The notes under the pieces: model-generated
Databases searched by the model: none
Seen by the model: the letters and a program-made list of their open reading frames with translations, nothing else
What the model was told of the DNA's origin: nothing
Made by a program: the position numbers and the translations under genes
Assembly: GCF_006345805.1 (NCBI RefSeq)
Contig: NC_043016.1
Span: forward strand, 12,028,001-12,092,000
DNA from: Octopus sinensis
Taxonomy: Eukaryota
Length of the DNA stretch: 64,000 bases
Direction: 5' to 3'
Shown: piece after piece, positions 2,738 through 63,720 of the stretch
Layout: the number at the start of each line of letters is the position of its first letter
Numbering within the stretch: the stretch's first letter is position 1

Positions 2738-3125
2738 AATCATCATCATCATCGTTTAACGTCTGTTTTCCACGCTAGCATGAGTTGGACGGTTCGACCG
2801 GGTTCTGGGAAGCCAGGAGGCTGCACCAGGCTCCAGTCTGATCTGGCAGTGTTTCTACGGCTGGATGCCCTTCCTAACGCCAACCACTCCACGAGTGTAG
2901 TGGGTGCTTTTGACATGCCACCTGCACAGGTGCCGGGGGGGGGGTCCGGCATCGGCTACGATTGGTTGGTGCTTTTAACGTGCCGCCGGCACGGAAGCCA
3001 GCCAATGCGGCGCTGGCATTGGCCACGTTTGGATGGTGCTTTTTATGTGCCACCGGCACAGAAGCCAGTCGAGGCGGCGCTGGCAACGGCCACGTTCGGA
3101 TGGTGCTTTCTATGTGCCACCGGAA
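2738..3125 (-). mobile_element. Family C retroposon with internal tandem sub-repeats
   Basis: (CAT)n tail on +; repeated ggtgctttt..gtgccaccggcac modules. Confidence 0.75.
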
Positions 3126-14455: not shown

Positions 14456-14844
14456 CACACACACACACACACATATATATATATGAAGGAAGATGATTAT
14501 CAGAAATGCGTTGTTTATGTTCTGAGTTCAAATCTCATCAATGCTGATTTATCCCACTTCTAGGTTTGACAAAATTAATTCCAGACAAGTACCAGGATTA
14601 GTATATTCAACTGTCCTGAGAACACATCAAAGAAATCCCTAGGACTTGAACCTCAGATCACAGAAAGGTGAAACCTCTGGCAATTTATCTGAATAAGTGC
14701 ATGCATGGATAAATAGTAATAATACGCATATGTACAAATGTATGGCACAAACAAAATTGCGTGTTAAAGGAGTTTTTGCTTTGCAGCCATATGAATTCAA
14801 TTTTGGTCACACAGGATATCTTTCATCTGGGCAGATATCTTTCA

Positions 14845-15221
14845 TGTGATCAATGCCAGAACCGTCTGACTCGTGCCCGTGCCGGTGGCATGTAAAAAGT
14901 ACCATCCAAAAGTAACCGATTCCAGTACCCACTGACTGGTTCCCATGTTGGTGGCATATGAAAAGCACTATCCAAATGTGATCAATGCCAGGCCCACTTG
15001 ACTAGCCGTCATGCCAGTGGCACGTAAAAGGCACCCACTACACTCTGAGTGGTTGGTGATAGGAAGGGCATCCAGCTATAGCAACACTGCCAGATCAGAT
15101 TGGGGCCTGGTGCAGCAGTTGGCTCTCCAGACCTCAGTCAAACCGTCCGACCCATGCCAGTATGGAAAAACAGACGTTAAATGATGATGATGATCACCAT
15201 GATGGTGGTGGTGGTGGTGGT
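14845..15221 (+). mobile_element. Family C retroposon with (ATG)n tail and 13-bp TSD
   Basis: CAGATATCTTTCA at 14832-14844 and 15222-15234; internal tandem sub-repeats; many other copies, e.g. 1560-1710, 5525-5710, 7205-7355 and 19350-19605. Confidence 0.75.
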
Positions 15222-16711: not shown

Positions 16712-18279
16712 TATATATATATGTATATATATATCCCTCTATCCCCTCTCTCTATTAACACACACACACACACATATATATAAATACCATTTACTGTTTA
16801 CTTGTTTCAATCATTTGCCTGTGACCATGCTGGGGCATCACCTTGTTGTGTAGTCAAACAAATCGGCTCCCAAGACTTATTTTTTTAAGCCCAGTACTTG
16901 TTCTATTGGTCACTTTTGCTGAACTGCTAAGTTACAGGGGTTTAAACACACCAACACTGAATGTCAAGCAGTGGTAGGGGACAAACATAGACATAAAGAT
17001 ACACACAGATATATAAATATTTAAATATAAATATATATAAACATATATATATAAATATAAATAAACATAAATACATGAATATATATATATATATATAAAC
17101 ACAAACACACATACATGTTGAAAAAATCTATTCACAAGGCTTTGGTTGACCCAAGGTGCCATGCAGTGGAACTGAACCTGGGACCATGCGGTTGGTAAGC
17201 AAGCTTCTTACTATACAGCCATGCTTGTGCCTATATCACTATCATCATTAAATGTCCACTTTCCATGCTAGTATGGGTTGGACGGTTTGACTGAAACCTG
17301 GTGAGCTGCACCAGGTTCCAGTCTGATTGGGCATGGTTTCTTTGGTTGGTTCCTTATGCCAACTACTCCAAGAGTGTAGCAGGAGAGGGCTAGCTTAGCT
17401 ATTTCTCTGTAGAGTGAGGAAAATGATGGAACAGCCTCAATCGATTTTCAAACCTTATGTGTTTCTCATCAGAGGAGACTACATCAATTTGACCAATCCC
17501 AGAGAAACAAACAGCTAACCTGTTTACAGACTCAACAATTAGACAGTAGCCACAGAAAACTGGTGCCCCTAATTTGCATACCAAATGTATTAAATCATCA
17601 CAGGCACAAAACACTTTGTTTAGATCCGGTGTTTAGTTACATTGCTTAATATATGTCAATCAACCGTTTTCTCTCCCTCTCTATTTACCAATCCGTCACG
17701 TGCTCCTTCAGTCTGAGTCACATACTCACACACACACATTCCTCATCTTTCCCGCCATACTCCCCTATATATTAATCAACTTATCTATCTATCTGTGTGT
17801 GCGTTTGTGTGTGTACACTCACACACAAGCATATGTATGCATGTGTATGTCCAAGTCCACACCAGGCCACATACAAACCACCAGATCAAGTCTTTCTCCC
17901 TCTAAACATCAGCAACCTGGAAGCTCCTACCTGTTCATGTTTTCTTGCAAGTGTCAACATGCAGTAAGTGAAAGTGGAACATTGCCAAGAGCAGTCCGAC
18001 TGCCTTTGGATGCTCTAGATGCAACATTTATATATACACACACACCACATTCATGTGTATATAACATATAAATGCATTATCATTATCAGCATCATCATTT
18101 AATGTCCGTTTTCTGCGGGTTAGGTGGTGTGTATGTATATATATATATATATACACACACACACATTAATATATATATATATATCTTTGTTATAAGATCA
18201 TAAATCAGAAAAGAGCATACCCTAAAATAAAGATATATATATATATATATATATACACATACATACATACATATATAGT

Positions 18280-23133: not shown

Positions 23134-23353
23134 ATTATCTACATTAGGCATAATTTAAGTATGTTCTTTAAAAAAACATACACAACAAAAATTGTCAAGG
23201 GTTTTCAAAATAATTACTTCATTCATTAAGCATTCTGACTTAATTTTCTATATTATATATAAAAAAAAAACACAATTTTAAAAAACAAACTGGTGGTGCC
23301 CCAGCATGGCCACAGCTCGTGAGCTGAAACTAGAATCAATCAATCAAACTTAC

Positions 23354-23462: not shown

Positions 23463-23902
23463 CTAGAAAAAAATGAAATAACATAAGAATTATTTATATC
23501 CAACAAGGCCAAACATTTCTTAGTTTACTGTTTATGTAGGAAACAGTTTTAGTGAGAACAATCTGAATAAAATGTAAACATGACTTCAAATAATCTATTT
23601 AAAAGACTGACATGTTCAAGTTAATGCTTGGTATTTTGGGCAAGTGCTTTCTACTATTAACCCTCGGCCAACCAACTCAGCTCAAAACAATATCTGTGTA
23701 TCGTTATGAAGGGAAATAACCTGGAAATCGCGATACACAGATATTGTTGTGAGCTGATTTGGGGTGCAAGATTCCCTTGTTTGAAAATATAAGGACACAG
23801 ATCGTGTTGTATAGCCAGCTGGAGATGATGTCTCCTGGGGCTAAATTACAGCAACATTTGTCCTAAACTAGGTCTGTCCTGTTATGTTGGCAAACAATCT
23901 TT

Positions 23903-24087
23903 ACTCCAGGGTTGATTTGCTGGACTAAACTTTTTAAGGTAGTGCTCCAGCATGGCCATAGTCCAATGACAGAAACAAGTAAAAGATAAAAGATATACTG
24001 GGATTGATTTGTTCAACTAAAACCCTTCAAGGTGGTGCCCCAGCATGGCCACAGTCCAATGACTGAAACAAGTAACAGATAAAAGAT
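23903..24087 (+). repeat. Two tandem copies of the same 93-bp SINE-tail module in KIBRA intron 3
   Basis: 23973-24065 is 93/93 identical to array unit 1 (60588-60680); the first copy is more diverged. Confidence 0.9.
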
Positions 24088-36730: not shown

Positions 36731-36887
36731 AGGAGTGGCTGTGTGGTAAGTAGCTTGCTAACCAGCTACATGGTTCCGGGTTCAGTCCCACTGCGTGGCA
36801 TCTTGGGCAAGTGTCTTCTGCTATAGCCCCGGGCTGACCAATGCCTTGTGAGTGGATTTGGTAGACAGAAACTGAAAGAAGCCTGTC

Positions 36888-40240: not shown

Positions 40241-40273
<33 letters not shown>

Positions 40274-41050
40274 TATATATATGTATATATATATATACAT
40301 ATATTATATATACATATATATATACATATATATATATACATATATATATAGATATATACACATATATATATACATATATATACATATATTATACATATAT
40401 ATACATATATATACATATATATATACATATATATATATACATATATATATACATATATATACATATATATATACATATATATATACATATATATACATAT
40501 ATATATACATATATATACATATATATACATATACATACATATACATATATATACATATATATACATATATATACATATATATATACTATATATATACATA
40601 TATATATATACATATATATATACATATATACATATATATACATATATATACATATATATACATATATATACATATATATACATATATATACATATATATA
40701 CATATATATATATATATATACAATATATATATATATACTATATATATATATACATATATATATATATTACATATATATATATACATATATATATATACAT
40801 ATATATATACATATATATATATACATATATATATATACATATATATATATATACATATATATACATATATATATATATATACATATATATACATATATAT
40901 ATATATACATATATATACATATATATATATATATACATATATATAAATACATATATATACATATATATATATACATATATATACACATATACATATATAT
41001 ACATATACATATATATACACATATATACATATACATATATATATATATAT
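40240..41050. repeat. About 810-bp compound (TA)n/(TACA) microsatellite
   Basis: Nearly pure A/T/C alternation; source of the Y/I-rich ORFs. Confidence 0.95.
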
Positions 41051-43132
41051 AGCAATGTCATTTGTTAACTTAGAGCAAGCAGTAAGTCAGAGTGTTTCCA
41101 CGATGAACTTCCTGGCATGACCTCTGCTTCCAAAAGATTTTTGATGAGTGAAGAACATTTTACTCGAGGTGTATTACTATGATTATATGCTGAAATTTAA
41201 AACACAAAAATAAAAACAGAGACGGGGGGAAAGGTTGCTAGCGTATATTCTCTCTGATATTTGTGAAAGTTATTTATTTAAAACAGGAAACACAGGTGGG
41301 GGAGGTACTATAAAGGAAACTTAGCGGAAGAAACAAAGTTAATTACATACGATAGCCTGCGCTTCTCATCCATGTAACTAATTTTACAGGAAGCAAATAT
41401 AACCCCTAGTTGTAGGGATACCTTTAACTCGTGAAAGGACTAAATAGTTTTAAAATTAGTTTTCCTATTTCCCTATTTGACTTGTCGAAATTAGAATCTT
41501 AGTTTTAATTGCAAAAAACACCTTCACTAACGAATAAAGTAGATCACTAATAAAGATTATAAATTATTAATTCAATTACTTGACAGATTCGTTTTTCCGG
41601 CAAAGGAATAATAAAAAAAATTTAAAAAACTTGCGGTTATGATAGTTTAAAACTACTTGATCCTTAACCAAAATAATAGTGGATAAAAACAAATAAATAG
41701 ATTGTGATAAATTTCACATAGAAAACTGAAAAAAGGTCAAAAACTAAATGAAAAATATTCAATTCTATCTTGTGAAATTGTGCAATGTTTTGAGCCATGA
41801 ATCAAATCAAGTCAGGAGTTAATTTTGAAACCGAACATTAAACTTTCTAATTTTAAAATATTTATTAAGTTTAATATAGCTATTTTATTTTCTAAGTTAT
41901 AATAAAGACTTAAAGATTGTGTGTGTGGGGATAGAAATTACTGTAATATCAAACTATTCAAGACATTTCCGGTATAAAATTATGAGTCAATCGGATCAGT
42001 AGATTAAGGTAATGCCAAGCTTCAATTCCAGTCTCTTTCCACCTTTACTAGTGTAAATCAACCATTTTAAAAAATCTTTACAGTCATTTCGATGCCAAAG
42101 AACATGCAAGAGGAATAAAACTAAAACTATTTCATAGGAATTCCACCCACCCACTCAATTGAGTTATCTTCCCCAGAAAATAGTTCAAAAAATAAACAAA
42201 ACTTTTTTTGTGAAGACAATGGTACTTTCTAAAGCAAGAACTCAACAAATGGTTAAATAATCCATTTGGATATTATACAATCTCATTTCATTTACGAAAA
42301 TATTTAGTAAACTTTGTAATTTAGAAGTTTAAAAAAAAACAAAAATCTTTTCATCTAATAAAAGAAATGTCTAGATGAAAGATAAATTTAATATTTCATA
42401 AACCAAGCATTGAAACTTTGTGAGTGTGTGTGTATAAAGAGAGACATATAAACACACACTCACACATGCATACACATCTACATACATACATACAAACCAA
42501 CAAACAAAAGTACAAACAAAATATTTGAAGGCCCCCAGGCTTCGTAATTTGCAGGTGCTTACTGATTTTGTAACTATTACAGCAAATAGCGCACTAAGAA
42601 TGATTTCAAAATGATATAAACATATTAAGCATACCACTATTCCAAAACTATGTATGCACTTTTAAATGCGCCTACACGTTAGATTTCTTAGGCAATGAGA
42701 ATAAATCTTTGGTTGATTGGTTCAAAATAACCGAAACCAATTCTTCTATTAGCAGCTGACAAATCTGATTTGAAAACAACAGCCATCACCAGTTAAATAG
42801 TGGAGCATCGTATACATATATTATGTTCGTACACCAAGAAAACATTTCGGATGGTTGTCATTTTAAACTAAATATAAATTCCATAATACACGCGACAAGC
42901 ACATGCCTGCCTTCACAAGAAGGAAAAACGGAATTATTAAATATTTGTTCGAAAAGCTGTACTGTTATCATTACTAAGAGAATTTATTCTATAGTTTGAA
43001 AAATAATGATGATCATGATGATGATAATAAACCAAGTCAATTAAAATAAGTCCTAAAATTAAAACTATTGTATTTCACACGTTTTTACTGTCTAGAAACG
43101 AACCTTTGAAGTGTGATAAATTTGATCCACAA

Positions 43133-45580: not shown

Positions 45581-45944
45581 GTGTAATTATACACATACAT
45601 ATGTATGTGTGCATGTATGTATGTATGTATGTATGTATGTATGCATGTATGTATGCATGTATGTAATTCACACACATCGGGCTCAGAACACATGCATTAA
45701 TTACCCCCGAATACTCAGAACGATCACTTGTTAAAACAATTAGTCGGACCTCAGTCTACCCGATGCACCCCCGAAAATATATATAAACAAATCTCACAAG
45801 GACAGAGAAAGCATTCGAGCAACAATGTTGTATATGAAGACAGTAATGGCAATAATAATAATAAGCATACCAACAACAACAACAACATTGGTAATGATAG
45901 TAAAATGATTGTACAAAAGAAAAGGGGGTAAAAATGATAACTAC

Positions 45945-46072
45945 CTGTCGCGCGGGTCAATCCATGTCGTTTTCTTTGAATTGTGGTCAATGTAGAATAC
46001 CTTTCCATCGTAATCGGTTCCTTCCTCCCATCCTGCTGGTAGGGATAGGTCGCCATTCCTCCATTTAGGCAT
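45945..46072 (-). CDS. WWC1: KIBRA/WWC1 ortholog, coding exon 1 (WW domain 1)
   Basis: ATG at 46072-46070; [42 protein letters not shown]+AG matches the KIBRA N-terminus (LPxGWEExxDxDGKVxYIDH...TxWIDPRDR); 128 nt; donor AG|GTAGTT. Confidence 0.96.
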
Positions 46073-46459
46073 TATTTTCAGCCACAAACTACGTGAGATT
46101 AGATAGACAGATAGATAGATGGAGACAGGACAGACAGATAGATAGACAGAAGGAGAGAGAGAGAGACAGAAGGAGAGAGAGACAGAGACAGAGAGAGAGA
46201 GGAAGGAAGAAAGAGAAAGAGTCACGTTACTCACACACACGCTCACACATTCGCAAAAAAAAAACACAGCAAACAGCTACATGGCGGAATTTTCCATCTT
46301 CGTTGACTTCTTTAAAAAATTGTATATATTTTTTTTTATTACTATTATTACGGTGATTATTATTATTATTATTATTACTCGCCTTGTTGGCTTTTGGCTG
46401 GCAGAGTTTCGAGATTAATACTAATGCTTCGTTGGATGTACACGACTCTTACTGGCCTG

Positions 46460-55230: not shown

Positions 55231-56379
55231 CCGATCTGGCAATGTTTCTACAGCTGGATGCCCTTCCTAACTCTGAGAGTGTAGTGGGTGCTTTTTATGT
55301 GCCACCAGCACAGGAGTCAGTCAGGCAGCACTGGCATCAGTCATGTTCGGATGGTGCTTTTTACATGCCACCAGCACAGGGAGCCAGTCAGGCAGCACTG
55401 GCATCACCCACAACTACAATTGGGTTATGATAAACTAGTCTTTGTTGATTTGTTAATAAAAAGGATACTAAAATAATCAAAATACTAATGAACTTGTATG
55501 ATACTATTGATAGATTATTTTTTATAATAATGTCTTTGGATTCAGTCCCACTGCATGGCACCTTGAGCAAGTGTCTTCTGCTCAACTCAGGTCTGACTAA
55601 AAACTTGTGTGCGTGGATTTTGGAATATGTTTGTGTCCTGTTGCCTTCTTGACATCACATGATAACTGTAGACAAGCATCACTGTCATACAAGTTGTGTT
55701 GTTCATTTCCAATCTTCAGTGTTTTAACCATGGATGAGGAAATATTACTTTTCTTCAAAACAAGAGAGGGTTGGTTGGTTGGTTGGTTGGTGGAAGGGCA
55801 TTCATGTAGAGAAAATCTGCCTCAGTGAATTCTGTCTGACCCATGCAAGCACGGAAAAGTGGTCTATAAAGTGATGAATACAAGGATGATGATGATGATG
55901 GTGGTGGTGGTGGTGGTGGTGGTGGTGGTGGTGGTAGAGTGTATGGCAGTGGCAGCAGTGCCTGCAGAAGCAATGGCAGCAGCCGCAGTGGTGGATGGGT
56001 GGTGGTGGTGGTGGTGGTGATGTGACACCTTCACTGCATATTTAATCTTGGTCGGGTTTCTTTGAAATTTACCAATTTTTTTTTTTACAGAAACTTTACT
56101 AAATATGTTTTCCCCTAAAAAGATAAATAAAATAAAATAAAATAAAGACTCTAAATATTTGATTCCAGTTCAGAAAATTAACAGATTTACAAATATGTTA
56201 AGAGTGACATTTAATAAAAGAAATATAAATTAAGAACAATAGCCACAAGCATGGTTGTGTGGTGAAAAAGATTGCTTCTAAACCAAGTAGGTATGGTGCA
56301 ATGGGTATGTCTTCAACTATAGTCCCATGCCTACCAATGCTTTGTGAGTGAATTTACTAGATGGAAACTGTGCAAAAGC

Positions 56380-56968
56380 GTCGAGCTGGCAGAAACGTTA
56401 GCAACGCTGGGCGAAATGCTTTGTGGTATTTTGACAGCCGTTACGTTCTGTGTTCAAATTCTGCAGAGGTCAACTTTGCCTTTCATCCTTTCGGGGTCGA
56501 TTAAATAAATACCAGTTATGCACTGGGGTTGATATAATCGACTTAATCTGTTTGTCTGTCCTTGTTTGTCCCCTCTGTGTTTAGCCCCTTGTGGGTAGTA
56601 AAGAAATAGGTATTTCGTTTGCCATTACGTTCTGTGTTCAAATTCTGCAGAGGTCAACTTTGCCTTTCATCCTTTCGGGGTCGATTAAATAAATACCAGT
56701 TATGCACTGGGGTTGATATAATCGACTTAATCTGTTTGTCTGTCCTTGTTTGTCCCCTCTGTGTTTAGCCCCTTGTGGGTAGTAAAGAAATAGGTATTTC
56801 GTTTGCCATTACGTTCTGTGTTCAAATTCTGCAGAGGTCAACTTTGCCTTTCATCCTTTTGGGGTCAATAAATTAAGTACCAGTTACGCACTGGGGTCGA
56901 TGTAATTGACTTAATCCTTTTGTTTGTCCTTTCTATGTTTAGCCCCTTGTGGGCAATAAAGAAATAGG
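56380..56968 (+). mobile_element. tRNA-derived SINE (family A) trimer with 184-bp period and flanking TSD
   Basis: Head gtcgagctggcagaaacgttagc; body starts at 56441, 56625 and 56809; direct repeat GGAAACTGTGCAAAAGC at 56363-56379 and 56967-56983; inserted in an older family-B-like SINE. Confidence 0.85.
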
Positions 56969-57028
56969 AAACTGTGCAAAAGCCTGTCATGTGTATGCAT
57001 TTGCATATGGATGTATTTATGTATTATG

Positions 57029-57062
<34 letters not shown>

Positions 57063-58250
57063 TGTATGTATGTATGTATGTATGCTCATGTCTGTGTATG
57101 TATCTTTGCAATTGTGTTTGTCTCCTCTAACACTATTTGATAAGCAATATTCATTTGTTTACATTCTTCTAACTTAACAGTTCAACAAACAAAAGCTAAA
57201 TGGATAGAATAAAACCAGGCTTTAAAATATGTATTTATACTGAAGGTCGATTTGATAATCTAAACCCTTCAAGCCATTGCTCCTGCACAATCACAGTTCT
57301 ATGACGGGAACCAGAGGCATCACCAGGTTTTGAAGTTAGTGGTAGCATATGAAAGAAGGTTCTGTGACATATACCAAAGCACAGAATTTTCTCAGTGAAC
57401 AGGCTGTGGTCTCAAAGCGACAAAAATATTTTGACAAATTAAATTTAAAATTTACATGCTGAAGTGAAATTAACAGTTTTTGTTTGTTTTTAAATTGCAT
57501 ATAAACACCTTCCACGCTGCTATGGTTTTTGTTTCAGCACACGATCTCAGATTAGGACACTTGCTATGCAAGTACATCTCCATAATCTTTAACTCGTTTT
57601 TCTTATATAATATAAAATATTTCATGAGTTATAATAAACGATTTTTATTCTACCAGGGGCAGACTGAGCTGTCAGTCAATTGGGCACTGCCTGAGGGCCC
57701 AGAGTTTTGAGGAGCCTGCACTCTACATGTTATCTGTACTAATATCAATGCTAAGGAGCCTGGTAAACAGTTATGCCAGGGGTCCCTTAATACTCTCAGT
57801 CCACCCCTGTATTCTACATTCATTAGTTTCATATTTCGGTAACAATGTCATTATGTATGGAACTTATAATGACTGATATAGCTAAATGAAGATTTTAAAA
57901 TATTGTTGAGGCAGCACCAGTTTTGAAAATGTACTCAAAGGGTAGCAGTCACTCTCTTTGCTCCCCTATTAGCTACACTACTGACTGGAACCAGCAAAAG
58001 TACAAATGAGTGAAAAGACATGTAAATTCCATGTTGGAGAAATTCAGTTGTTTTAAAAAAAAAAGAAATTTTATTTTCTTCAAAACTCTTCCTCTGCAAA
58101 CACAATAATATAAACAGAGAGAGAGAGAGAGAGGGAGAGAGAGAGAAAGAGAGAGAGAGAGAGCAGATATAGAAGACCTGGCTAAGACTAGACTAGATGT
58201 TATTAAAGAAGCAATAATCATCGCAGATATACACTACGTGTCTATATACC

Positions 58251-58667
58251 TATTTCTTTACTACCCACAAGGGGCTAATCACAGAGAGGACAAACAAGGA
58301 CAGACATACGGATTAAGTCGATTATATCAACACCAGTGCGTAACTAGTACTTATTTAATCAACCCTGAAGGGATGAAAGGCAAAGTTGACCTTGGCGGAA
58401 TTTGAACTCACAATGTAATGACAGATGAAATACCTATTTCTTTACTACCCACAAGGGGCTATACACAGAGAGGACAAAGAAGGACAGACAAACTGATAAG
58501 GTCGATTATATTGACCCCAGTGCATAACTGGTACTTAATTTATCGACCCCGAAAGGATGAAAGGCAAAGTCGACCTCGGCGGAATTTGAACTCAGAACGT
58601 AACGGCAGACGACATACGGCTACGCATTTCGCCCGGCGTGCTAACGTTTCTGCCAGCTCGCCACCTT
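58251..58667 (-). mobile_element. Family A SINE dimer with TSD
   Basis: Same tail-to-internal junction (AAAGAAATAGG|TATTTC) as the trimer; direct repeat GTGTCTATATACC at 58238-58250 and 58672-58684. Confidence 0.85.
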
Positions 58668-60269
58668 ATATGTGTCTATATACCATTGCTGTGTACGGTA
58701 GATTGGCAATCTATTGAAACTGTCTTTGGTATATCTCTGAAGGTTTTCAACATCATTTAATCCAAGACATGTTAGTTTGGTTGCTGCCATCGTTTTTTCA
58801 AAGCAAAAATCCACGGAAATATTTGAATCATCATCACAAACTAATGAATCATTTGCAAAACTTTATGCTACCAGGTTCTTGCAGCAGCATACTGTGCTCC
58901 ACACTGCAAGAATCTTATTACTGCCAAGTTGACTCAGCATAAAGAAATCTTGAAGATAATCATAATATATAAACAACACTGTTTCAGTCAATAAACTTGA
59001 CTCTTTAGCATTTAAACTGGCCATGTCTTGCCCAGTTATTATAACTGTCTTGTGTTGAAATTTGCCAGATTCAGCCTCTCACACCTACCATACAATGTTA
59101 TTCTGAAAATACATCATTGAACTCCTAAAGCTATGAGGTAATGTATAATTAATTCAAAACAATGTGAATAAATAAGATGATTTACTGAATGGTTAAAGCA
59201 AATCGTTCAGATGTTACTGTTAAACCTTTGGAGATGGAGCCTCATTTGAAGTTTCAGTGCCAAGAAGATGGGGCCCTTTTCACAAGCCCTATAGAGAGCA
59301 TGCACTTATTTTTCAAAAGATTTATAAGAAATAAAGTAATTACTTTACATGTATAAAGTTATATATATTCTTGTTGGAAATTGAATGAACTAACACAATC
59401 TTCCTAATTCAACTTTTCAGCCAATAGTTTGGCTCTGTCATCTCCTTAAGGGTAAAGACCACCAGGAAAGAAATATGTAAACCTTTGCCATTTAAACCAT
59501 CCATATCCAGCTCAAATATTCTATCAGTTTTATGTTCAAACTGGTCAGATCCTGCCTCTCACACCATACCCTACAATATCATTCTAAAGATAAACAAGAG
59601 CACTCAGAGTGCGCAAAACTCTGCCAAGGCAACACCAACATCCTCTCAATGATTAGCCAGAGATGATTTTTAAAATGAGAATATCTGAAATAAACTCGAC
59701 TGCTCTCACAAACGTGAATACTAAAAATGAACCCGACCATTCTCAAAAATTAAGTAAAAAAAAAACTGGAAAAATAATCCAGAATCCTTGTCCGGTATCG
59801 GATCAATCACAAAATCTAATCAGTTTGTGCCAGTCACGAAGCCAAACATCCCTGAAATTTTAATCTGAATTCATTCAGCAGTTCAAGTTACTAGATAATG
59901 AATGATTAATTGGAAACAATTAATTACATTTGACAGAATAATCTGAATGCTAAAGAGTTAAATTAGTCCATTGATAGCAACGTGACCTTGTAGTTACAAA
60001 GCTGCACTGGTAATTACAAGATTGTAGTTTCAATTCATGGACCTAATGGTGCATTATACTCTTTTACTTGTTTCAGTCATTTGATTGTGGCCATGCTGGA
60101 GCACTGCCTTTAGTCGAGCAAATCGACCCAGGACTTATTCTTTGTAAGCCTAGTACTTATTCTATCGGTCTCTTTTGCTGAACCACTAAGTTACGGGGAC
60201 GTAAACACACCAGCATCGGCTGTCAAGCGATGTTGGGGGGACAAACATAGACACACAAGCATATACACA

Positions 60270-60318
<49 letters not shown>

Positions 60319-60351
60319 TTTTTTTTCTCTAGTCTCGAGAGTCAGTGCATG

Positions 60352-60507
60352 GAGTGGCTGTGTGGTAAGTAGCTTACTTACCAACCACATGGTACCGGGT
60401 TCAGTCCCACTGCGTGGTACCTTGGGGAAGTGTCTTCTACTATAGCCTGGGCCGACCAAAGCCTTGTGAGTGGATTTGGTAGACAGAAACTGAAAGAAGC
60501 CCATCGC

Positions 60508-60541
<34 letters not shown>

Positions 60542-60551
60542 TTATCTATAT

Positions 60552-60587
<36 letters not shown>
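60352..60587 (+). mobile_element. 5' half of a family B SINE plus (TCTA)n(TA)n, abutting the 93-bp array
   Basis: GGAGTGGCTGTGTGGTAAG...GAAAGAAGCCCATCG followed by microsatellite; the usual middle section is absent. Confidence 0.8.
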
Positions 60588-62653
60588 AAACAAGTAAAAG
60601 ATAAAAGATATACTGGGATTGATTTGTTCAACTAAAACCCTTCAAGGTGGTGCCCCAGCATGGCCACAGTCCAATGACTGAAACAAGTAAAAGATAAAAG
60701 ATATACTGGGATTGATTTGTTCAACTAAAACCCTTCAAGGTGGTGCCCCAGCATGGCCATAGTCCAATGACTGAAACAAGTAAAAGATAAAAGATATACT
60801 GGGATTGATTTGTTCAACTAAAACCCTTCAAGGTGGTGCCCCAGCATGGCCACAGTCCAATGACTGAAACAAGTAAAAGATAAAAGATATACTGGGATTG
60901 ATTTGTTCAACTAAAACCCTTCAAGGTGGTGCCCCAGCATGGCCATAGTCCAATGACTGAAACAAGTAAAAGATAAAAGATATACTGGGATTGATTTGTT
61001 CAACTAAAACCCTTCAAGGTGGTGCCCCAGCATGGCCAGAGTCCAATGACTGAAACAAGTAAAAGATAAAAGATATACTGGGATTGATTTGTTCAACTAA
61101 AACCCTTCAAGGTGGTGCCCCAGCATGGCCACAGTCCAATGACTGAAACAAGTAAAAGATAAAAGATATACTGGGGTTGATTTGTTCAACTAAAACCCTT
61201 CAAGGTGGTGCCCCAGCATGGCCAGAGTCCAATGACTGAAACAAGTAAATGATAAAAGATATACTGGGATTGATTTGTTCAACTAAAACCCTTCAAGGTG
61301 GTGCCCCAGCATGGCCACAGTCCAATGACTGAAACAAGTAAAAGATAAAAGATATACTGGGATTGATTTGTTCAACTAAAACCCTTCAAGGTGGTGCCCC
61401 AGCATGGCCATAGTCCAATGACTGAAACAAGTAAAAGATAAAAGATATACTGGGGTTGATTTGTTCAACTAAAACCCTTCAAGGTGGTGCCCCAGCATGG
61501 CCATAGTCCAATGACTGAAACAAGTAAAAGATAAAAGATATACTGGGGTTGATTTGTTCAACTAAAACCCTTCAAGGTGGTGCCCCAGCATGGCCATAGT
61601 CCAATGACTGAAACAAGTAAAAGATAAAAGATATACTGGGATTGATTTGTTCAACTAAAACCCTTCAAGGTGGTGCCCCAGCATGGCCAGAGTCCAATGA
61701 CTGAAACAAGTAAATGATAAAAGATATACTGGGATTGATTTGTTCAACTAAAACCCTTCAAGGTGGTGCCCCAGCATGGCCACAGTCCAATGACTGAAAC
61801 AAGTAAAAGATAAAAGATATACTGGGGTTGATTTGTTCAACTAAAACCCTTCAAGGTGGTGCCCCAGCATGGCCACAGTCCTATGAGTGAAATAAGTAAA
61901 AGATAAGTGATATACTGTGATTGATTTGTTCAACTAAAACCCTTCAAGGTGGTGCCCCAGCATGGCCATAGTCCAATGACTGAAACAAGTAAAAGATAAA
62001 AGATATACTGGGATTGATTTGTTCAACTAAAACCCTTCAAGGTGGTGCCCCAGCATGGCCACAGTCCATGACTGAAACAAGTAAAAGATAAAAGATATAC
62101 TGGGATTGATTTGTTCAACTAAAACCTTCAAGGTGGTGCCCCAGCATGGCCACAGTCCAATGACTGAAACAAGTAAAAGATAAAAGATATACTGGGATTG
62201 ATTTGTTCAACTAAAACCCTTCAAGGTGGTGCCCCAGCATGGCCACAGTCCACTGACTGAAACAAGTAAAAGATAAAAGATATACTGGGATTGATTTGTT
62301 CAACTAAAACCCTTCAAGGTGGTGCCCCAGCATGGCCATAGTCCAATGACTGAAACAAGTAAAAGATAAAAGAATACTGGGATTGATTTGTTCAACTAAA
62401 ACCCTTCAAGGTGGTGCCCCAGCATGGCCATAGTCCAATGACTGAAACAAGTAAAAGATAAAAGATATACTGGGATTGATTTGTTCAACTAAAACCCTTC
62501 AAGGTGGTGCCCCAGCATGGCCACATTCCAATGACTGAAACAAGTAAAAGATAAAAGATATACTGGGATTGATTTGTTCAACTAAAACCCTTCAAGGTGG
62601 TGCCCCAGCATGGCCACAGCCCAATGACTGAAACAAGTAAAAGATAAAAGATA
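60588..62653 (+). repeat. Tandem array of a 93-bp unit (22 full copies plus a 23-bp partial) derived from the 3' end of a SINE
   Basis: Unit AAACAAGTAAAAGATAAAAGATATACTGGGATTGATTTGTTCAACTAAAACCCTTCAAGGTGGTGCCCCAGCATGGCCACAGTCCAATGACTG starts at 60588, 60681, 60774 ... 62538; homologous to SINE tails such as 37070-37150. Confidence 0.95.
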
Positions 62654-63139
62654 CACACACACACAACAGGATTCTCTCTGTTTGTCTAGCAGATCCACTG
62701 ACAAGGTTTTGGCTGGCCTGAGGCTATAGCAGAAGACACTTGCCAAAGGTACTATGCAGTGGGACTGAACCTAGAACCATGTGATTAAAAAAACTAGCTT
62801 CTTAACACATAGCCATGTCTGTCCCTATAAACACGATTTGTTTTTTAATAGCCAAAAAAATTATAAGTTATATTAACAATTCATCCAAAGAACTGAATAT
62901 ATTTTTCAAAAACCCCAACAAAGAAAAACTGAAATGGAAAGGAGATATATTATCTATAATGGTTCTTCAATGATCTTATAAATGGTAAATTTCAAGACAT
63001 GTCTTTCTAAATACTTAAAAGTTTTTATGAATGTAAAACATAAACATCACTTAGTGAAATGCTTATTTCTAGAAATGCTATTTATTAATGGATTTTCCCC
63101 CTCTTTTTCTTTTAAATGGTTGATCCTTTATTTATTTAT

Positions 63140-63372
63140 TTAATTTTTATTATTATTATTACTACCATTATTATTATTATTGTTGTTATTATTATTATTA
63201 TTATTATTACTATTACTATCATTATTATTGTTGTTGTTGTTATTATTATTATTATTATTACTATTACTACTACCATTATTATTGTTGTTGTTATTATTAT
63301 TATTATCATTATTATTATTATTACCATTATTGTTGTTATTATTATTATTACCATTATTGTTGTTGTTATTAC

Positions 63373-63404
<32 letters not shown>

Positions 63405-63720
63405 GTATTAGTATTAGTATTATCATCATCTTTTGATTTCTAAGTCTTAATGCATTTTCTTTCCAAAGATAAAGAATACTTTTCAAAAGATTTTTGCCTG
63501 GTTAAGTATACAGTTTGTTTTTGTTTTGTCACTGATTTTTTTCTTTAATCTTTTCTTTATTTTATATCATTTCGTTTTTTTGAGTGAGTCTTTTTTCTCT
63601 TTTGCTTCTTTCATTTATCTTTCTTCTTCTTCTTCTTCTTCTTCTTCTTCTTCTTCTTCTTCTTCTTCTTCTTCTTCTTCTTCTCTTCTTCTTCTTCTTC
63701 TTCTTCTTCTTCTTCTTTTT
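63140..63720. repeat. Compound (ATT/GTT/ACC)n then (TTC)n trinucleotide tracts
   Basis: Source of the poly-I, poly-L and poly-S ORFs. Confidence 0.92.

What the first reader, a model, noticed from the sequence alone, without database searches (positions are those of the whole stretch)
60588..62653. A SINE 3'-tail module amplified into a homogeneous 22-copy, 93-bp array
Seen: 22 near-identical head-to-tail 93-bp units, each running from an internal SINE site (TACTGGG) to the SINE terminus (GAAACAAGTAAAAGATAAAAGA). The array lies between the microsatellite of a SINE 5' half (60352-60587) and the (CA)n stretch of an oppositely oriented SINE 5' half. No reading frame is open across the unit on either strand. 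Inference: a satellite being born from a defined retroposon module, either by local slippage or unequal exchange, or by reverse transcription of a circularised or multimeric RNA. It lies about 14.5 kb upstream of the KIBRA ATG.
Basis: partly seen in the sequence, partly recalled or inferred. Interest (0 to 1): 0.72.

Follow-up and report, generated by a model that had tools for sequence, protein, structure and literature searches.

The report
SINE-tail tandem array, grown in place
A 2-kb run of 22 near-identical 93-bp copies of the tail end of a short mobile element (SINE) is real and looks like a young, locally expanded, non-coding minisatellite, which is a known way for tandem DNA to arise from mobile elements rather than a new kind of feature.

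Summary
Positions 60588-62653 are a 93-bp tandem array: a 23-bp partial unit plus 22 units, 97% alike, with no open reading frame. Each unit is the last ~90 nt of a SINE tail, and every junction joins the SINE 3' terminus to an internal tail site.

Refinements:
- The array, together with a same-strand SINE head and microsatellite, is a 2.3-kb block lodged inside the (TG)n microsatellite of an older opposite-strand SINE. Joining the two flanks rebuilds a full SINE.
- The exact junction 22-mer also occurs at 23981-24002. There, a unit 99% identical to the array consensus follows an older SINE tail that is 82-86% identical. The junction is therefore not unique to the array.
- Units 1-13 carry only three shared variants. 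Units 14-22 carry all the private changes. Shared variants recombine among non-adjacent units. This points to stepwise growth in place by unequal exchange or slippage, not a one-step multimeric cDNA.
- A second SINE family shows the same kind of 3'-module tandems at two nearby loci.

Not testable here: a genome-wide junction census, read support for the copy number, and the source organism.

Verdict: a new member of a known kind (SINE-derived tandem arrays). Interest is modest.

The parts
60057..60240 (-). Tail of an older minus-strand SINE, the 3' part of the element that hosts the insertion.
   Evidence: 88% identical to other full-length tails. Colinear with four full SINE copies once the flanks are joined.
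60241..60311 (-). (CA)n on the plus strand, which is the (TG)n internal microsatellite of the older SINE. Left side of the break.
   Evidence: TRF rows 60241-60311 and 60265-60311. Joined-flank alignment.
60312..60341 (.). Spacer of about 30 nt (TATATAT, T9, CTCTAGTCTCGAGAG) between the host microsatellite and the plus-strand head. Its origin is unexplained.
   Evidence: Direct reading. It matches no SINE copy. No target-site duplication found.
60342..60510 (+). Plus-strand SINE head with a B-box-like GGTTCAGTCCCAC motif.
   Evidence: 90-92% identical to the heads at 36732 and 38166. Alignment A1. Not called as tRNA by ARAGORN or Rfam.
60511..60587 (+). (TATC)n(TA)n microsatellite, in the position of the internal SINE microsatellite.
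   Evidence: TRF. Alignment A1.
60588..60610 (+). Partial first unit. It contains only the terminal 23 nt of the SINE tail.
   Evidence: Unit split. It is the same 23 nt that closes the array at 62631-62653.
60611..61819 (+). Units 1-13, in the register TACTGGG...AAAAGATA. This is the homogeneous, younger part of the array.
   Evidence: Only three shared variable sites and no private change; 98.5% mean identity. A 265-bp exact duplicate at a 2-unit offset.
61820..62653 (+). Units 14-22, the more diverged, older part. It ends exactly at the SINE 3' terminus.
   Evidence: All 12 private events lie here, including three 1-bp deletions and a cluster at about 61880-61920. Mean identity 95.9%.
62654..62665 (-). 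(CA)6, the remainder of the older SINE's microsatellite. Right side of the break.
   Evidence: Direct reading. Joined-flank alignment.
62666..62828 (-). Head of the older minus-strand SINE.
   Evidence: 78.5% identical to the plus-strand head over 149 nt. Inverted repeat I1. Colinear in the joined-flank alignment.
23903..23995 (+). Second locus, first unit. It is the 3' tail of an older, different SINE-like element.
   Evidence: 82% (global) to 86% (BLAST) identical to the array consensus. It continues upstream into non-array SINE-like sequence.
23996..24087 (+). Second locus, second unit, joined to the first by the identical 22-mer junction.
   Evidence: 98.9% identical to the array unit over 92 nt. 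Exact junction at 23981-24002.

Best explanation
This is a SINE-derived tandem array of minisatellite size. It consists of a 23-bp partial unit followed by 22 copies of a 93-bp module, and the module is the last ~90 nt of a SINE tail. Every junction joins the SINE 3' terminus (...GTAAAAGATAAAAGATA) to an internal tail site (TACTGGG...), so it is a 'tail-to-internal' junction.

Shown:
- The array, a same-strand SINE head and a microsatellite make up a 2.3-kb block (60312-62653) inside the (TG)n microsatellite of an older opposite-strand SINE.
- The same junction exists at a second locus 36 kb away.
- The units are not all the same age, and variants are shuffled among non-adjacent units.

Inferred:
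- The seed was a tail-to-internal dimer made during retroposition. It could have been inherited from a source element with a duplicated tail, produced by a second 5'-truncated insertion at an existing tail, or produced by a reverse-transcriptase template jump. It may have arrived here as a 116-nt 5'-truncated copy (23 + 93 nt).
- Copy number then rose in place, step by step, through unequal sister-chromatid exchange or replication slippage between units. The most recent duplications were in the 5' thirteen units.

The array has no coding capacity, and nothing here indicates a function. Its position 14.5 kb upstream of the KIBRA start codon is most likely incidental.
For: - Array and junction statistics.
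- The unit equals the 3' end of dispersed SINE tails and ends at their terminus.
- Joined flanks (60030-60311 plus 62654-62835) align colinearly with four full-length SINE copies, with the break inside the microsatellite.
- Second locus: the exact 22-mer is at 23981-24002. Its downstream unit is 98.9% identical to the array unit, but its two units are only 78% (global) alike. It is therefore not a recent local duplication of its own first unit, and the unit with its junction moved or was inherited.
- Stepwise growth in place: units 1-13 have 0 private changes and units 14-22 have all 12. This gives P = 2e-5 if the events are independent, 2e-3 if the u14/u15 cluster counts once, and about 0.03 if the three 1-bp deletions are also dropped as possible read errors (the last figure is my arithmetic, (9/22)^4).
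- All four combinations of the col8 A/G and col57 C/T variants occur.
- Exact duplicates of 265 bp at a 2-unit offset and 204 bp at 5- and 7-unit offsets.
- Precedents: tail-to-internal dimers of non-LTR elements that then expand (PMC5932611), and SINE-derived satellites (PMC10702118).
Against: - The left edge has no extended unit running into upstream SINE tail sequence, which simple duplication of the neighbouring head's own tail would predict. About 120 nt of proximal tail are missing.
- No target-site duplication is recognisable apart from the CA repeat itself, so how the block inserted is unresolved.
- The polarity statistic weakens to about 0.03 under the most conservative counting.
- The variant pattern could have been copied from a pre-existing source array elsewhere, which could not be searched.
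- The copy number rests on the assembly alone.
Confidence: 0.72

Rival explanations
1. One-step origin at the RNA level. A multimeric cDNA was made by rolling-circle reverse transcription of a circular unit RNA, or by repeated template jumps from the internal site back to the 3' end during target-primed reverse transcription. It was then inserted as a whole into the microsatellite.
For: - The array ends exactly at the SINE terminus and begins mid-unit, like a 5'-truncated retrocopy.
- The same junction recurs at a second locus.
- A second, unrelated SINE family also has its 3' module repeated up to its terminus at two loci with one shared junction. Junctions anchored at an RNA 3' end are hard to explain by DNA breakage alone.
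- The unit has no TTTT run, so RNA polymerase III could read through it (direct reading).
Against: - Units are not of equal age: 0 private changes in 13 units against 12 in 9 units.
- Shared variants sit on recombinant backgrounds, and there are multi-unit exact duplicates.
- There is no flanking target-site duplication beyond the microsatellite.
- The unit RNA has no unusual fold (z = -0.9).
- This model may still explain the seed dimer, but not the 22 copies.
Confidence: 0.12
2. Assembly artefact. The true locus has far fewer units, and the assembler inflated the array.
For: No read data could be examined. Two of the three 1-bp deletions lie in short homopolymer runs, as long-read errors often do.
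Against: The units are not clones of one another. Their variants follow an aperiodic order, with unique units at the 3' end. That pattern is unlike a simple assembler loop. Both edges join cleanly to unique, interpretable flanks.
Confidence: 0.06
3. A local copy of an established, genome-wide 93-bp satellite family, brought here by segmental duplication, ectopic conversion or reintegration of extrachromosomal circles, rather than a locally born array.
For: A unit 99% identical to the array consensus, with the same junction, lies 36 kb away. Two loci in 64 kb suggests the junction may be common.
Against: The second locus has only two units. No further copy of the junction exists in the window. 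The age gradient along the array fits growth in place. Abundance could not be measured.
Confidence: 0.08
4. A functional element, for example a repeated regulatory module or non-coding RNA gene cluster acting on the KIBRA gene 14.5 kb away.
For: Only its position upstream of KIBRA exon 1.
Against: No open frame. No Rfam match. No unusual RNA fold. The sequence is that of a common mobile-element tail. The same architecture occurs elsewhere in the window in other repeat families.
Confidence: 0.02

Closest known systems
SINE-derived satellites (sSats) of squamate reptiles (Vassetzky, Kosushkin and Ryskov 2023, PMC10702118)
   Same: Both are tandem arrays whose unit is a portion of a SINE that is also dispersed in the same genome. 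In both, the arrays abut SINE sequence up to a SINE terminus, long arrays are more homogeneous than the dispersed copies, and short loci of a few units coexist with longer ones.
   Different: Here the host appears to be a mollusc, probably a cephalopod. That is my recollection of the SINE and was not tested. The array starts mid-unit, with no extended terminal unit at its 5' edge. Only two loci are visible. Neither a subtelomeric location nor multi-locus abundance could be examined.
Tail-to-internal tandem dimers of non-LTR retrotransposons and their expansion into arrays (McGurk and Barbash 2018, PMC5932611)
   Same: The junction joins an intact 3' end to a 5'-truncated internal position of the next copy. 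Dimers act as substrates that unequal exchange can expand, as with the ~16-copy hobo array.
   Different: That work concerns autonomous elements in Drosophila and uses population frequencies. Here the element is a SINE module, all 22 junctions are the same, and a target-site duplication inside the junction cannot be told apart from the tail's own terminal repeat.
Minisatellites and VNTRs derived from SINEs in mammals (Alu-derived minisatellites, B1-derived mouse VNTR), as tabulated in PMC9659126
   Same: A tandem array of kilobase scale arises from part of a SINE in euchromatic, gene-flanking DNA.
   Different: Those units are mostly short motifs or A-rich regions. Here the unit is a 93-bp module that includes the whole terminal tail region.
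Satellite arrays carried inside non-autonomous elements of bivalves (pearl/CvA, BIV160), as tabulated in PMC9659126
   Same: They are also in molluscs, and their tandem units are linked to a mobile element and spread to several loci.
   Different: Those carriers are DNA-transposon or Helitron-like elements with central repeats. Here the unit is the 3' end of a retroposon, and no such carrier termini are evident.

Membership tests
SINE-derived tandem array / sSat (PMC10702118) | Head-to-tail tandem units. | tested here: met
   22.2 copies, period 93, 97% matches. Unit list.
SINE-derived tandem array / sSat (PMC10702118) | The unit is homologous to part of a SINE that is dispersed in the same genome. 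| tested here: met
   The unit aligns to 13 dispersed tail copies at 70-90% identity. Full-length copies show a head, microsatellite and tail layout.
SINE-derived tandem array / sSat (PMC10702118) | A terminal unit extends into SINE sequence up to a SINE terminus. | tested here: inconclusive
   The 3' edge ends at the SINE terminus. The 5' edge starts mid-unit next to a microsatellite, with about 120 nt of proximal tail missing. The dimer at 23903-24087 does continue upstream into SINE-like sequence.
SINE-derived tandem array / sSat (PMC10702118) | Several loci in the genome, with satellite-like abundance and chromosomal preference. | not testable with these tools
   Two loci in the window. 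The collections searched do not hold the source genome.
Tail-to-internal TE dimer expanded by unequal exchange (PMC5932611) | The junction joins an intact 3' end to a 5'-truncated internal site. | tested here: met
   The junction ...AAAAGATAAAAGATA|TACTGGG... lies within 2 nt of the ends of the dispersed copies.
Tail-to-internal TE dimer expanded by unequal exchange (PMC5932611) | A target-site duplication lies inside the junction (double insertion). | tested here: inconclusive
   A possible AAAAGAT repeat cannot be distinguished from the tail's own (TAAAAGA)2 ending.
Tail-to-internal TE dimer expanded by unequal exchange (PMC5932611) | Signs of later recombinational expansion. | tested here: met
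   Shared variants on recombinant backgrounds, an age gradient, and multi-unit exact duplicates.
One-step multimeric retrocopy (rolling-circle or template-jump cDNA) | All units have the same age. | tested here: not met
   0 private changes in units 1-13 against 12 in units 14-22.
One-step multimeric retrocopy (rolling-circle or template-jump cDNA) | A flanking target-site duplication around the whole insert. | tested here: inconclusive
   Only the CA microsatellite is shared by the two flanks.
Classical satellite DNA | Long arrays (tens of kb or more), high genomic abundance, heterochromatic location. | tested here: not met
   The array is 2,066 bp and lies in gene-flanking DNA 14.5 kb from a coding exon. 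Abundance is unknown.
tRNA-derived SINE (the parent element) | A tRNA-like head carrying an internal RNA polymerase III promoter. | tested here: inconclusive
   A B-box-like GGTTCAGTCCCAC motif is visible by eye. ARAGORN finds no tRNA and Rfam gives no tRNA match.
tRNA-derived SINE (the parent element) | Dispersed copies with defined ends and target-site duplications. | tested here: met
   At least 10 copies share their ends. The joined-flank test rebuilds a full copy. A nested SINE of a second family has a 17-bp duplication at 56363-56379 and 56967-56983.

The most novel reading that the evidence does not exclude
In this genome, tail-to-internal multimers may be made routinely at the retroposition step. 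The reverse transcriptase would jump from a preferred internal site back to the 3' end of a SINE RNA, guided by short homology: TA for the 93-bp unit and GGTAT for the 184-bp unit. On this reading, two unrelated SINE families keep producing junction-bearing copies that spread and then seed arrays. The 22-copy array would be the visible tip of a genome-wide, RNA-launched route from SINEs to satellites in a mollusc.
Probability: 0.2. Interest if true: 0.55.

Novelty: new member of a known kind. Interest (0 to 1): 0.3.

Why it matters
Tandem arrays born from mobile elements are a recognised source of new satellite DNA. Clear SINE-to-array cases are still few, and the best documented are in squamate reptiles (PMC10702118). 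My searches of the held literature found none for cephalopods.

This locus preserves several stages together:
- the dispersed parent tails;
- a two-unit locus with the same junction;
- a 22-unit array whose age gradient records stepwise growth.

If the genome-wide census shows many such junctions, the host would be a good system for asking how the first duplication is made, at the RNA or the DNA level. As a single locus it is most likely a neutral, probably length-polymorphic minisatellite upstream of KIBRA.

Tried and rejected
- Junction 22-mer scanned in metagenome, prokaryote-genome and viral collections. The one hit (L001) is a chance match in an unrelated contig.
- Exact look-up of unit ORFs, flank ORFs and the KIBRA exon ORF in the protein collection found none.
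- Homology search with the array translated in its three minus frames gave no hit.
- Homology search with the antisense ORF of the SINE head consensus gave no candidate.
- The KIBRA exon-1 peptide hit only short Logan ORFs at 88% identity or less. The source species appears to be absent from the collections.
- tRNA detection on the SINE heads with ARAGORN and Rfam was negative.
- The RNA fold of the unit is not unusual.
- The search for a target-site duplication around the 2.3-kb block and around the dimer found nothing beyond the microsatellite and the tail motif.
- Higher-order periodicity by lag analysis is flat.
- The bacterial promoter and terminator scan does not apply to this eukaryotic sequence and was disregarded.
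- A literature search with SINE sequence strings found no paper. The octopus genome paper PMC4795812 is not held.
- A Helitron- or MITE-borne satellite was considered and rejected, because the flanks are SINE parts, not such termini.

Full report
**1. The observation**

Tandem Repeats Finder reports an array at 60588-62653 with period 93, 22.2 copies, 97% matches and no indels. I split it by hand. It begins with a 23-bp partial unit, AAACAAGTAAAAGATAAAAGATA, directly after a (TA)n run. Twenty-two units follow, three of them with a 1-bp deletion. The array closes with the same 23 nt just before CACACA.

None is expected in shuffled sequence. Every reading frame has at least one stop per unit, and each of the three minus frames has exactly one.

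The ORF with the N-terminal WW domain, [18 protein letters not shown]..., lies on the minus strand with its ATG near 46072, 14.5 kb from the array. It aligns to the first WW domain of KIBRA at the same N-terminal position.

**2. What the unit is**

The window holds many copies of a SINE built as follows:
- a head of about 165 nt;
- an internal (TA)n(TG)n microsatellite;
- a tail of about 215 nt ending ...ATGACTGAAACAAGTAAAAGAGTAAAAGA.

The 93-bp unit aligns to the last ~90 nt of that tail in 13 dispersed copies at 70-90% identity. It stops within 2 nt of where those copies stop. Each array junction therefore joins a SINE 3' terminus to an internal tail site.

The unit is not the commonest tail variant. 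It carries 7-9 extra nt (ACTAAAACCCTTCAAGG against ACTAAAGG) and is only 75-80% like the tails that go with heads most similar to the neighbouring head. It is closer to the tail at 23903-23995 and to the copy at about 16785-17221, which have an insertion at the same place.

I could not confirm that the head is tRNA-derived. A B-box-like motif is visible, but ARAGORN and Rfam are negative. My recollection is that this SINE architecture is that of octopus SINEs (Ohshima and Okada 1994, cited). That is a lead, not a test, and the organism could not be identified with the tools.

**3. The surroundings**

To the left of the array lie a plus-strand head (about 60342-60510) and a (TATC)n(TA)n run (60511-60587). 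The ~120 nt of proximal tail that should follow are absent.

Further left is a minus-strand SINE tail with (CA)n (60057-60311). To the right are (CA)6 and a minus-strand head (62666-62828). I joined the two outer flanks and aligned the result with four full-length copies. It is colinear from first to last base, with the break inside the microsatellite.

The 2.3-kb block 60312-62653 is therefore an insertion into the microsatellite of an older, opposite-strand SINE. Apart from the CA repeat itself, no target-site duplication is recognisable. A spacer of about 30 nt (60312-60341) remains unexplained.

**4. The junction is not unique**

The identical 22-mer lies at 23981-24002. There a SINE-like element ends in a tail that is 82-86% identical to the array consensus. 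It is followed directly by one more unit that is 98.9% identical to the array unit over 92 nt, and then by unrelated flank.

The two units of this dimer are only 78% alike in global alignment. The second unit is therefore not a recent local duplicate of the first. The unit, together with its junction, reached both loci in one of three ways:
- inheritance from a source element with a duplicated tail;
- insertion of a 5'-truncated copy at an existing tail end;
- ectopic conversion.

**5. How the 22 copies arose**

I aligned the units in the SINE register.

- Units 1-13 differ only at three sites, and each of those variants is shared by several units: A/G at column 8, C/T/G at column 57 and A/T at column 82. 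These units have no private change.
- Units 14-22 carry all 12 private events. Six of these are substitutions clustered within about 45 bp across the unit 14/15 junction, and three are 1-bp deletions.

If private events fell evenly across the array, the chance of this split is 2e-5. It is 2e-3 if the cluster counts as one event. It is about 0.03 if the deletions are also discounted as possible read errors (my arithmetic).

Mean identity is 98.5% in the 5' part and 95.9% in the 3' part. All four combinations of the column 8 and column 57 alleles occur. There are exact duplicates of 265 bp at a 2-unit offset and 204 bp at 5- and 7-unit offsets. No regular higher-order period is present.

These features indicate repeated duplication and exchange between units in place, with the latest growth at the 5' side. 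They speak against insertion of a single multimeric cDNA whose units would all be the same age. They do not say how the first dimer was made.

**6. The seed**

The array starts with just the terminal 23 nt and then full units. That is what a 5'-truncated retrocopy of a dimer-tailed element (23 + 93 nt) would look like. The two 23-nt repeats would then be the substrate for the first unequal exchange. This is inference.

It fits the description of tail-to-internal tandems of non-LTR elements arising at transposition and later expanding (PMC5932611). The unit RNA has no unusual fold.

**7. A wider pattern seen in passing**

A second, unrelated SINE family (head GGCGAGCTGGCAGAAACGTTAGC...) has its 3' 184-bp module in tandem at two loci:
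- 56437-56931, with 2.7 copies;
- 58246-58617 on the minus strand, with 2.0 copies.

Both share one junction (AAATAGGTAT|TTCRT) that again joins the element's terminus to an internal site. The first of these is a nested insertion with a 17-bp target-site duplication (56363-56379 and 56967-56983).

A third repeat family carries 66-67-bp internal tandems at 2948-3123 and 14844-15035.

Multimerised modules of mobile elements are thus common in this 64-kb window. That junctions in two SINE families are anchored at the 3' terminus hints at a retroposition-linked origin of the first duplication. This is the basis of the 'novel case', which I rate at 0.2.

**8. Comparison with what is known**

- SINE-derived satellites are described in squamates. 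Their units are portions of SINEs, their arrays abut SINE termini, and a few-unit loci coexist with long homogeneous ones (PMC10702118).
- Arrays derived from mobile elements are widespread in general (PMC9659126).
- I found no report for cephalopods. A recent detailed repeat annotation of Octopus vulgaris gives SINEs as 11.6% of that genome and does not mention such arrays.

I file the array as a new member of this known kind. Satellite status proper, meaning many loci and high abundance, is not shown.

**9. What could not be done**

No collection at hand holds the source genome or a close relative. The genome-wide junction census, read-level confirmation of copy number, and comparison of the orthologous site remain open. 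They are listed as decisive next steps.

**10. Verdict**

It is an ordinary though instructive SINE-derived minisatellite. Interest is 0.3.

Noticed in passing
56437-56931 (element about 56380-56966; flanking repeats 56363-56379 and 56967-56983): A second, unrelated SINE family has its 3' 184-bp module in tandem here (2.7 copies, 95% matches). Each junction joins the element's terminus (AAATAGGTAT) to an internal site. The whole element is a nested insertion, with a 17-bp target-site duplication (GGAAACTGTGCAAAAGC), in the head of another SINE. The two 5' units are 97.7% alike and the 3' unit is 88-90% alike, the same polarity as in the 93-bp array.
   Followed up: partly
58246-58617, minus strand (element about 58246-58665): Another copy of the same second SINE family, with 2.0 copies of the 184-bp module (86% matches) and the same junction as at 56.4 kb. 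Both copies in the window that carry this tail type are multimerised.
   Followed up: partly
2948-3123 and 14844-15035 (opposite strands): A third repeat family carries 66-67-bp internal tandem repeats (2.6 and 2.9 copies). At both loci the repeats start after the same lead-in sequence (...CCAACCACTC..GAGTGTAGTGGGTGC...).
   Followed up: partly
about 61880-61920: Six substitutions are clustered within about 45 bp across the junction of array units 14 and 15 (TCCTATGAGTGAAATAAGTAAAAGATAAGTGATATACTGTG). They do not match the variants of any SINE tail in the window. This looks like a mutational cluster or a conversion tract from an unseen copy.
   Followed up: partly
23672-23762: An imperfect inverted repeat (77% over 93 nt) sits inside the SINE-like element that precedes the two-unit locus. 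It interrupts the head-like region, and may be a small hairpin-forming insertion.
   Followed up: no
23292-23345: A fragment of about 55 nt has the same core as the array unit (GGTGGTGCCCCAGCATGGCCACAG) but a different ending (GAAACTAGAATCAATCAATC). It may be the 3' end of the partner LINE or of another SINE sharing this tail core.
   Followed up: no
60383-60448 and 62721-62786: The plus-strand head left of the array and the minus-strand head right of it form an inverted repeat (66 nt, 86% complementary) 2.3 kb apart. The minus-strand tail at 60060-60110 is also complementary (84-90%) to the last 51 nt of every array unit. Such inverted repeats could promote instability here.
   Followed up: no
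40241-41051; 63143-63423; 63621-63717; 1002-1199: Other tandem repeats: a very long (AT)n of about 406 repeats (811 bp), an (ATT)n of about 94 repeats, a (TTC)n of about 33 repeats, and a 39-bp repeat with 5.1 copies (93% matches).
   Followed up: no
57030-57102: An Rfam mir-297 match (47.6 bits, gathering score 90) lies on a (TATG)n microsatellite. It is a low-complexity artefact, not a microRNA gene.
   Followed up: yes
45941-46078 (KIBRA exon 1) and locus L002: The closest exon-1 relative in the protein collection is 88% identical, from a Logan contig of run ERR3431203. At the DNA level only the exon is shared (86%). None of the window's SINE families appears in that contig's 4 kb of intron, so it comes from a fairly distant relative.
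   Followed up: partly
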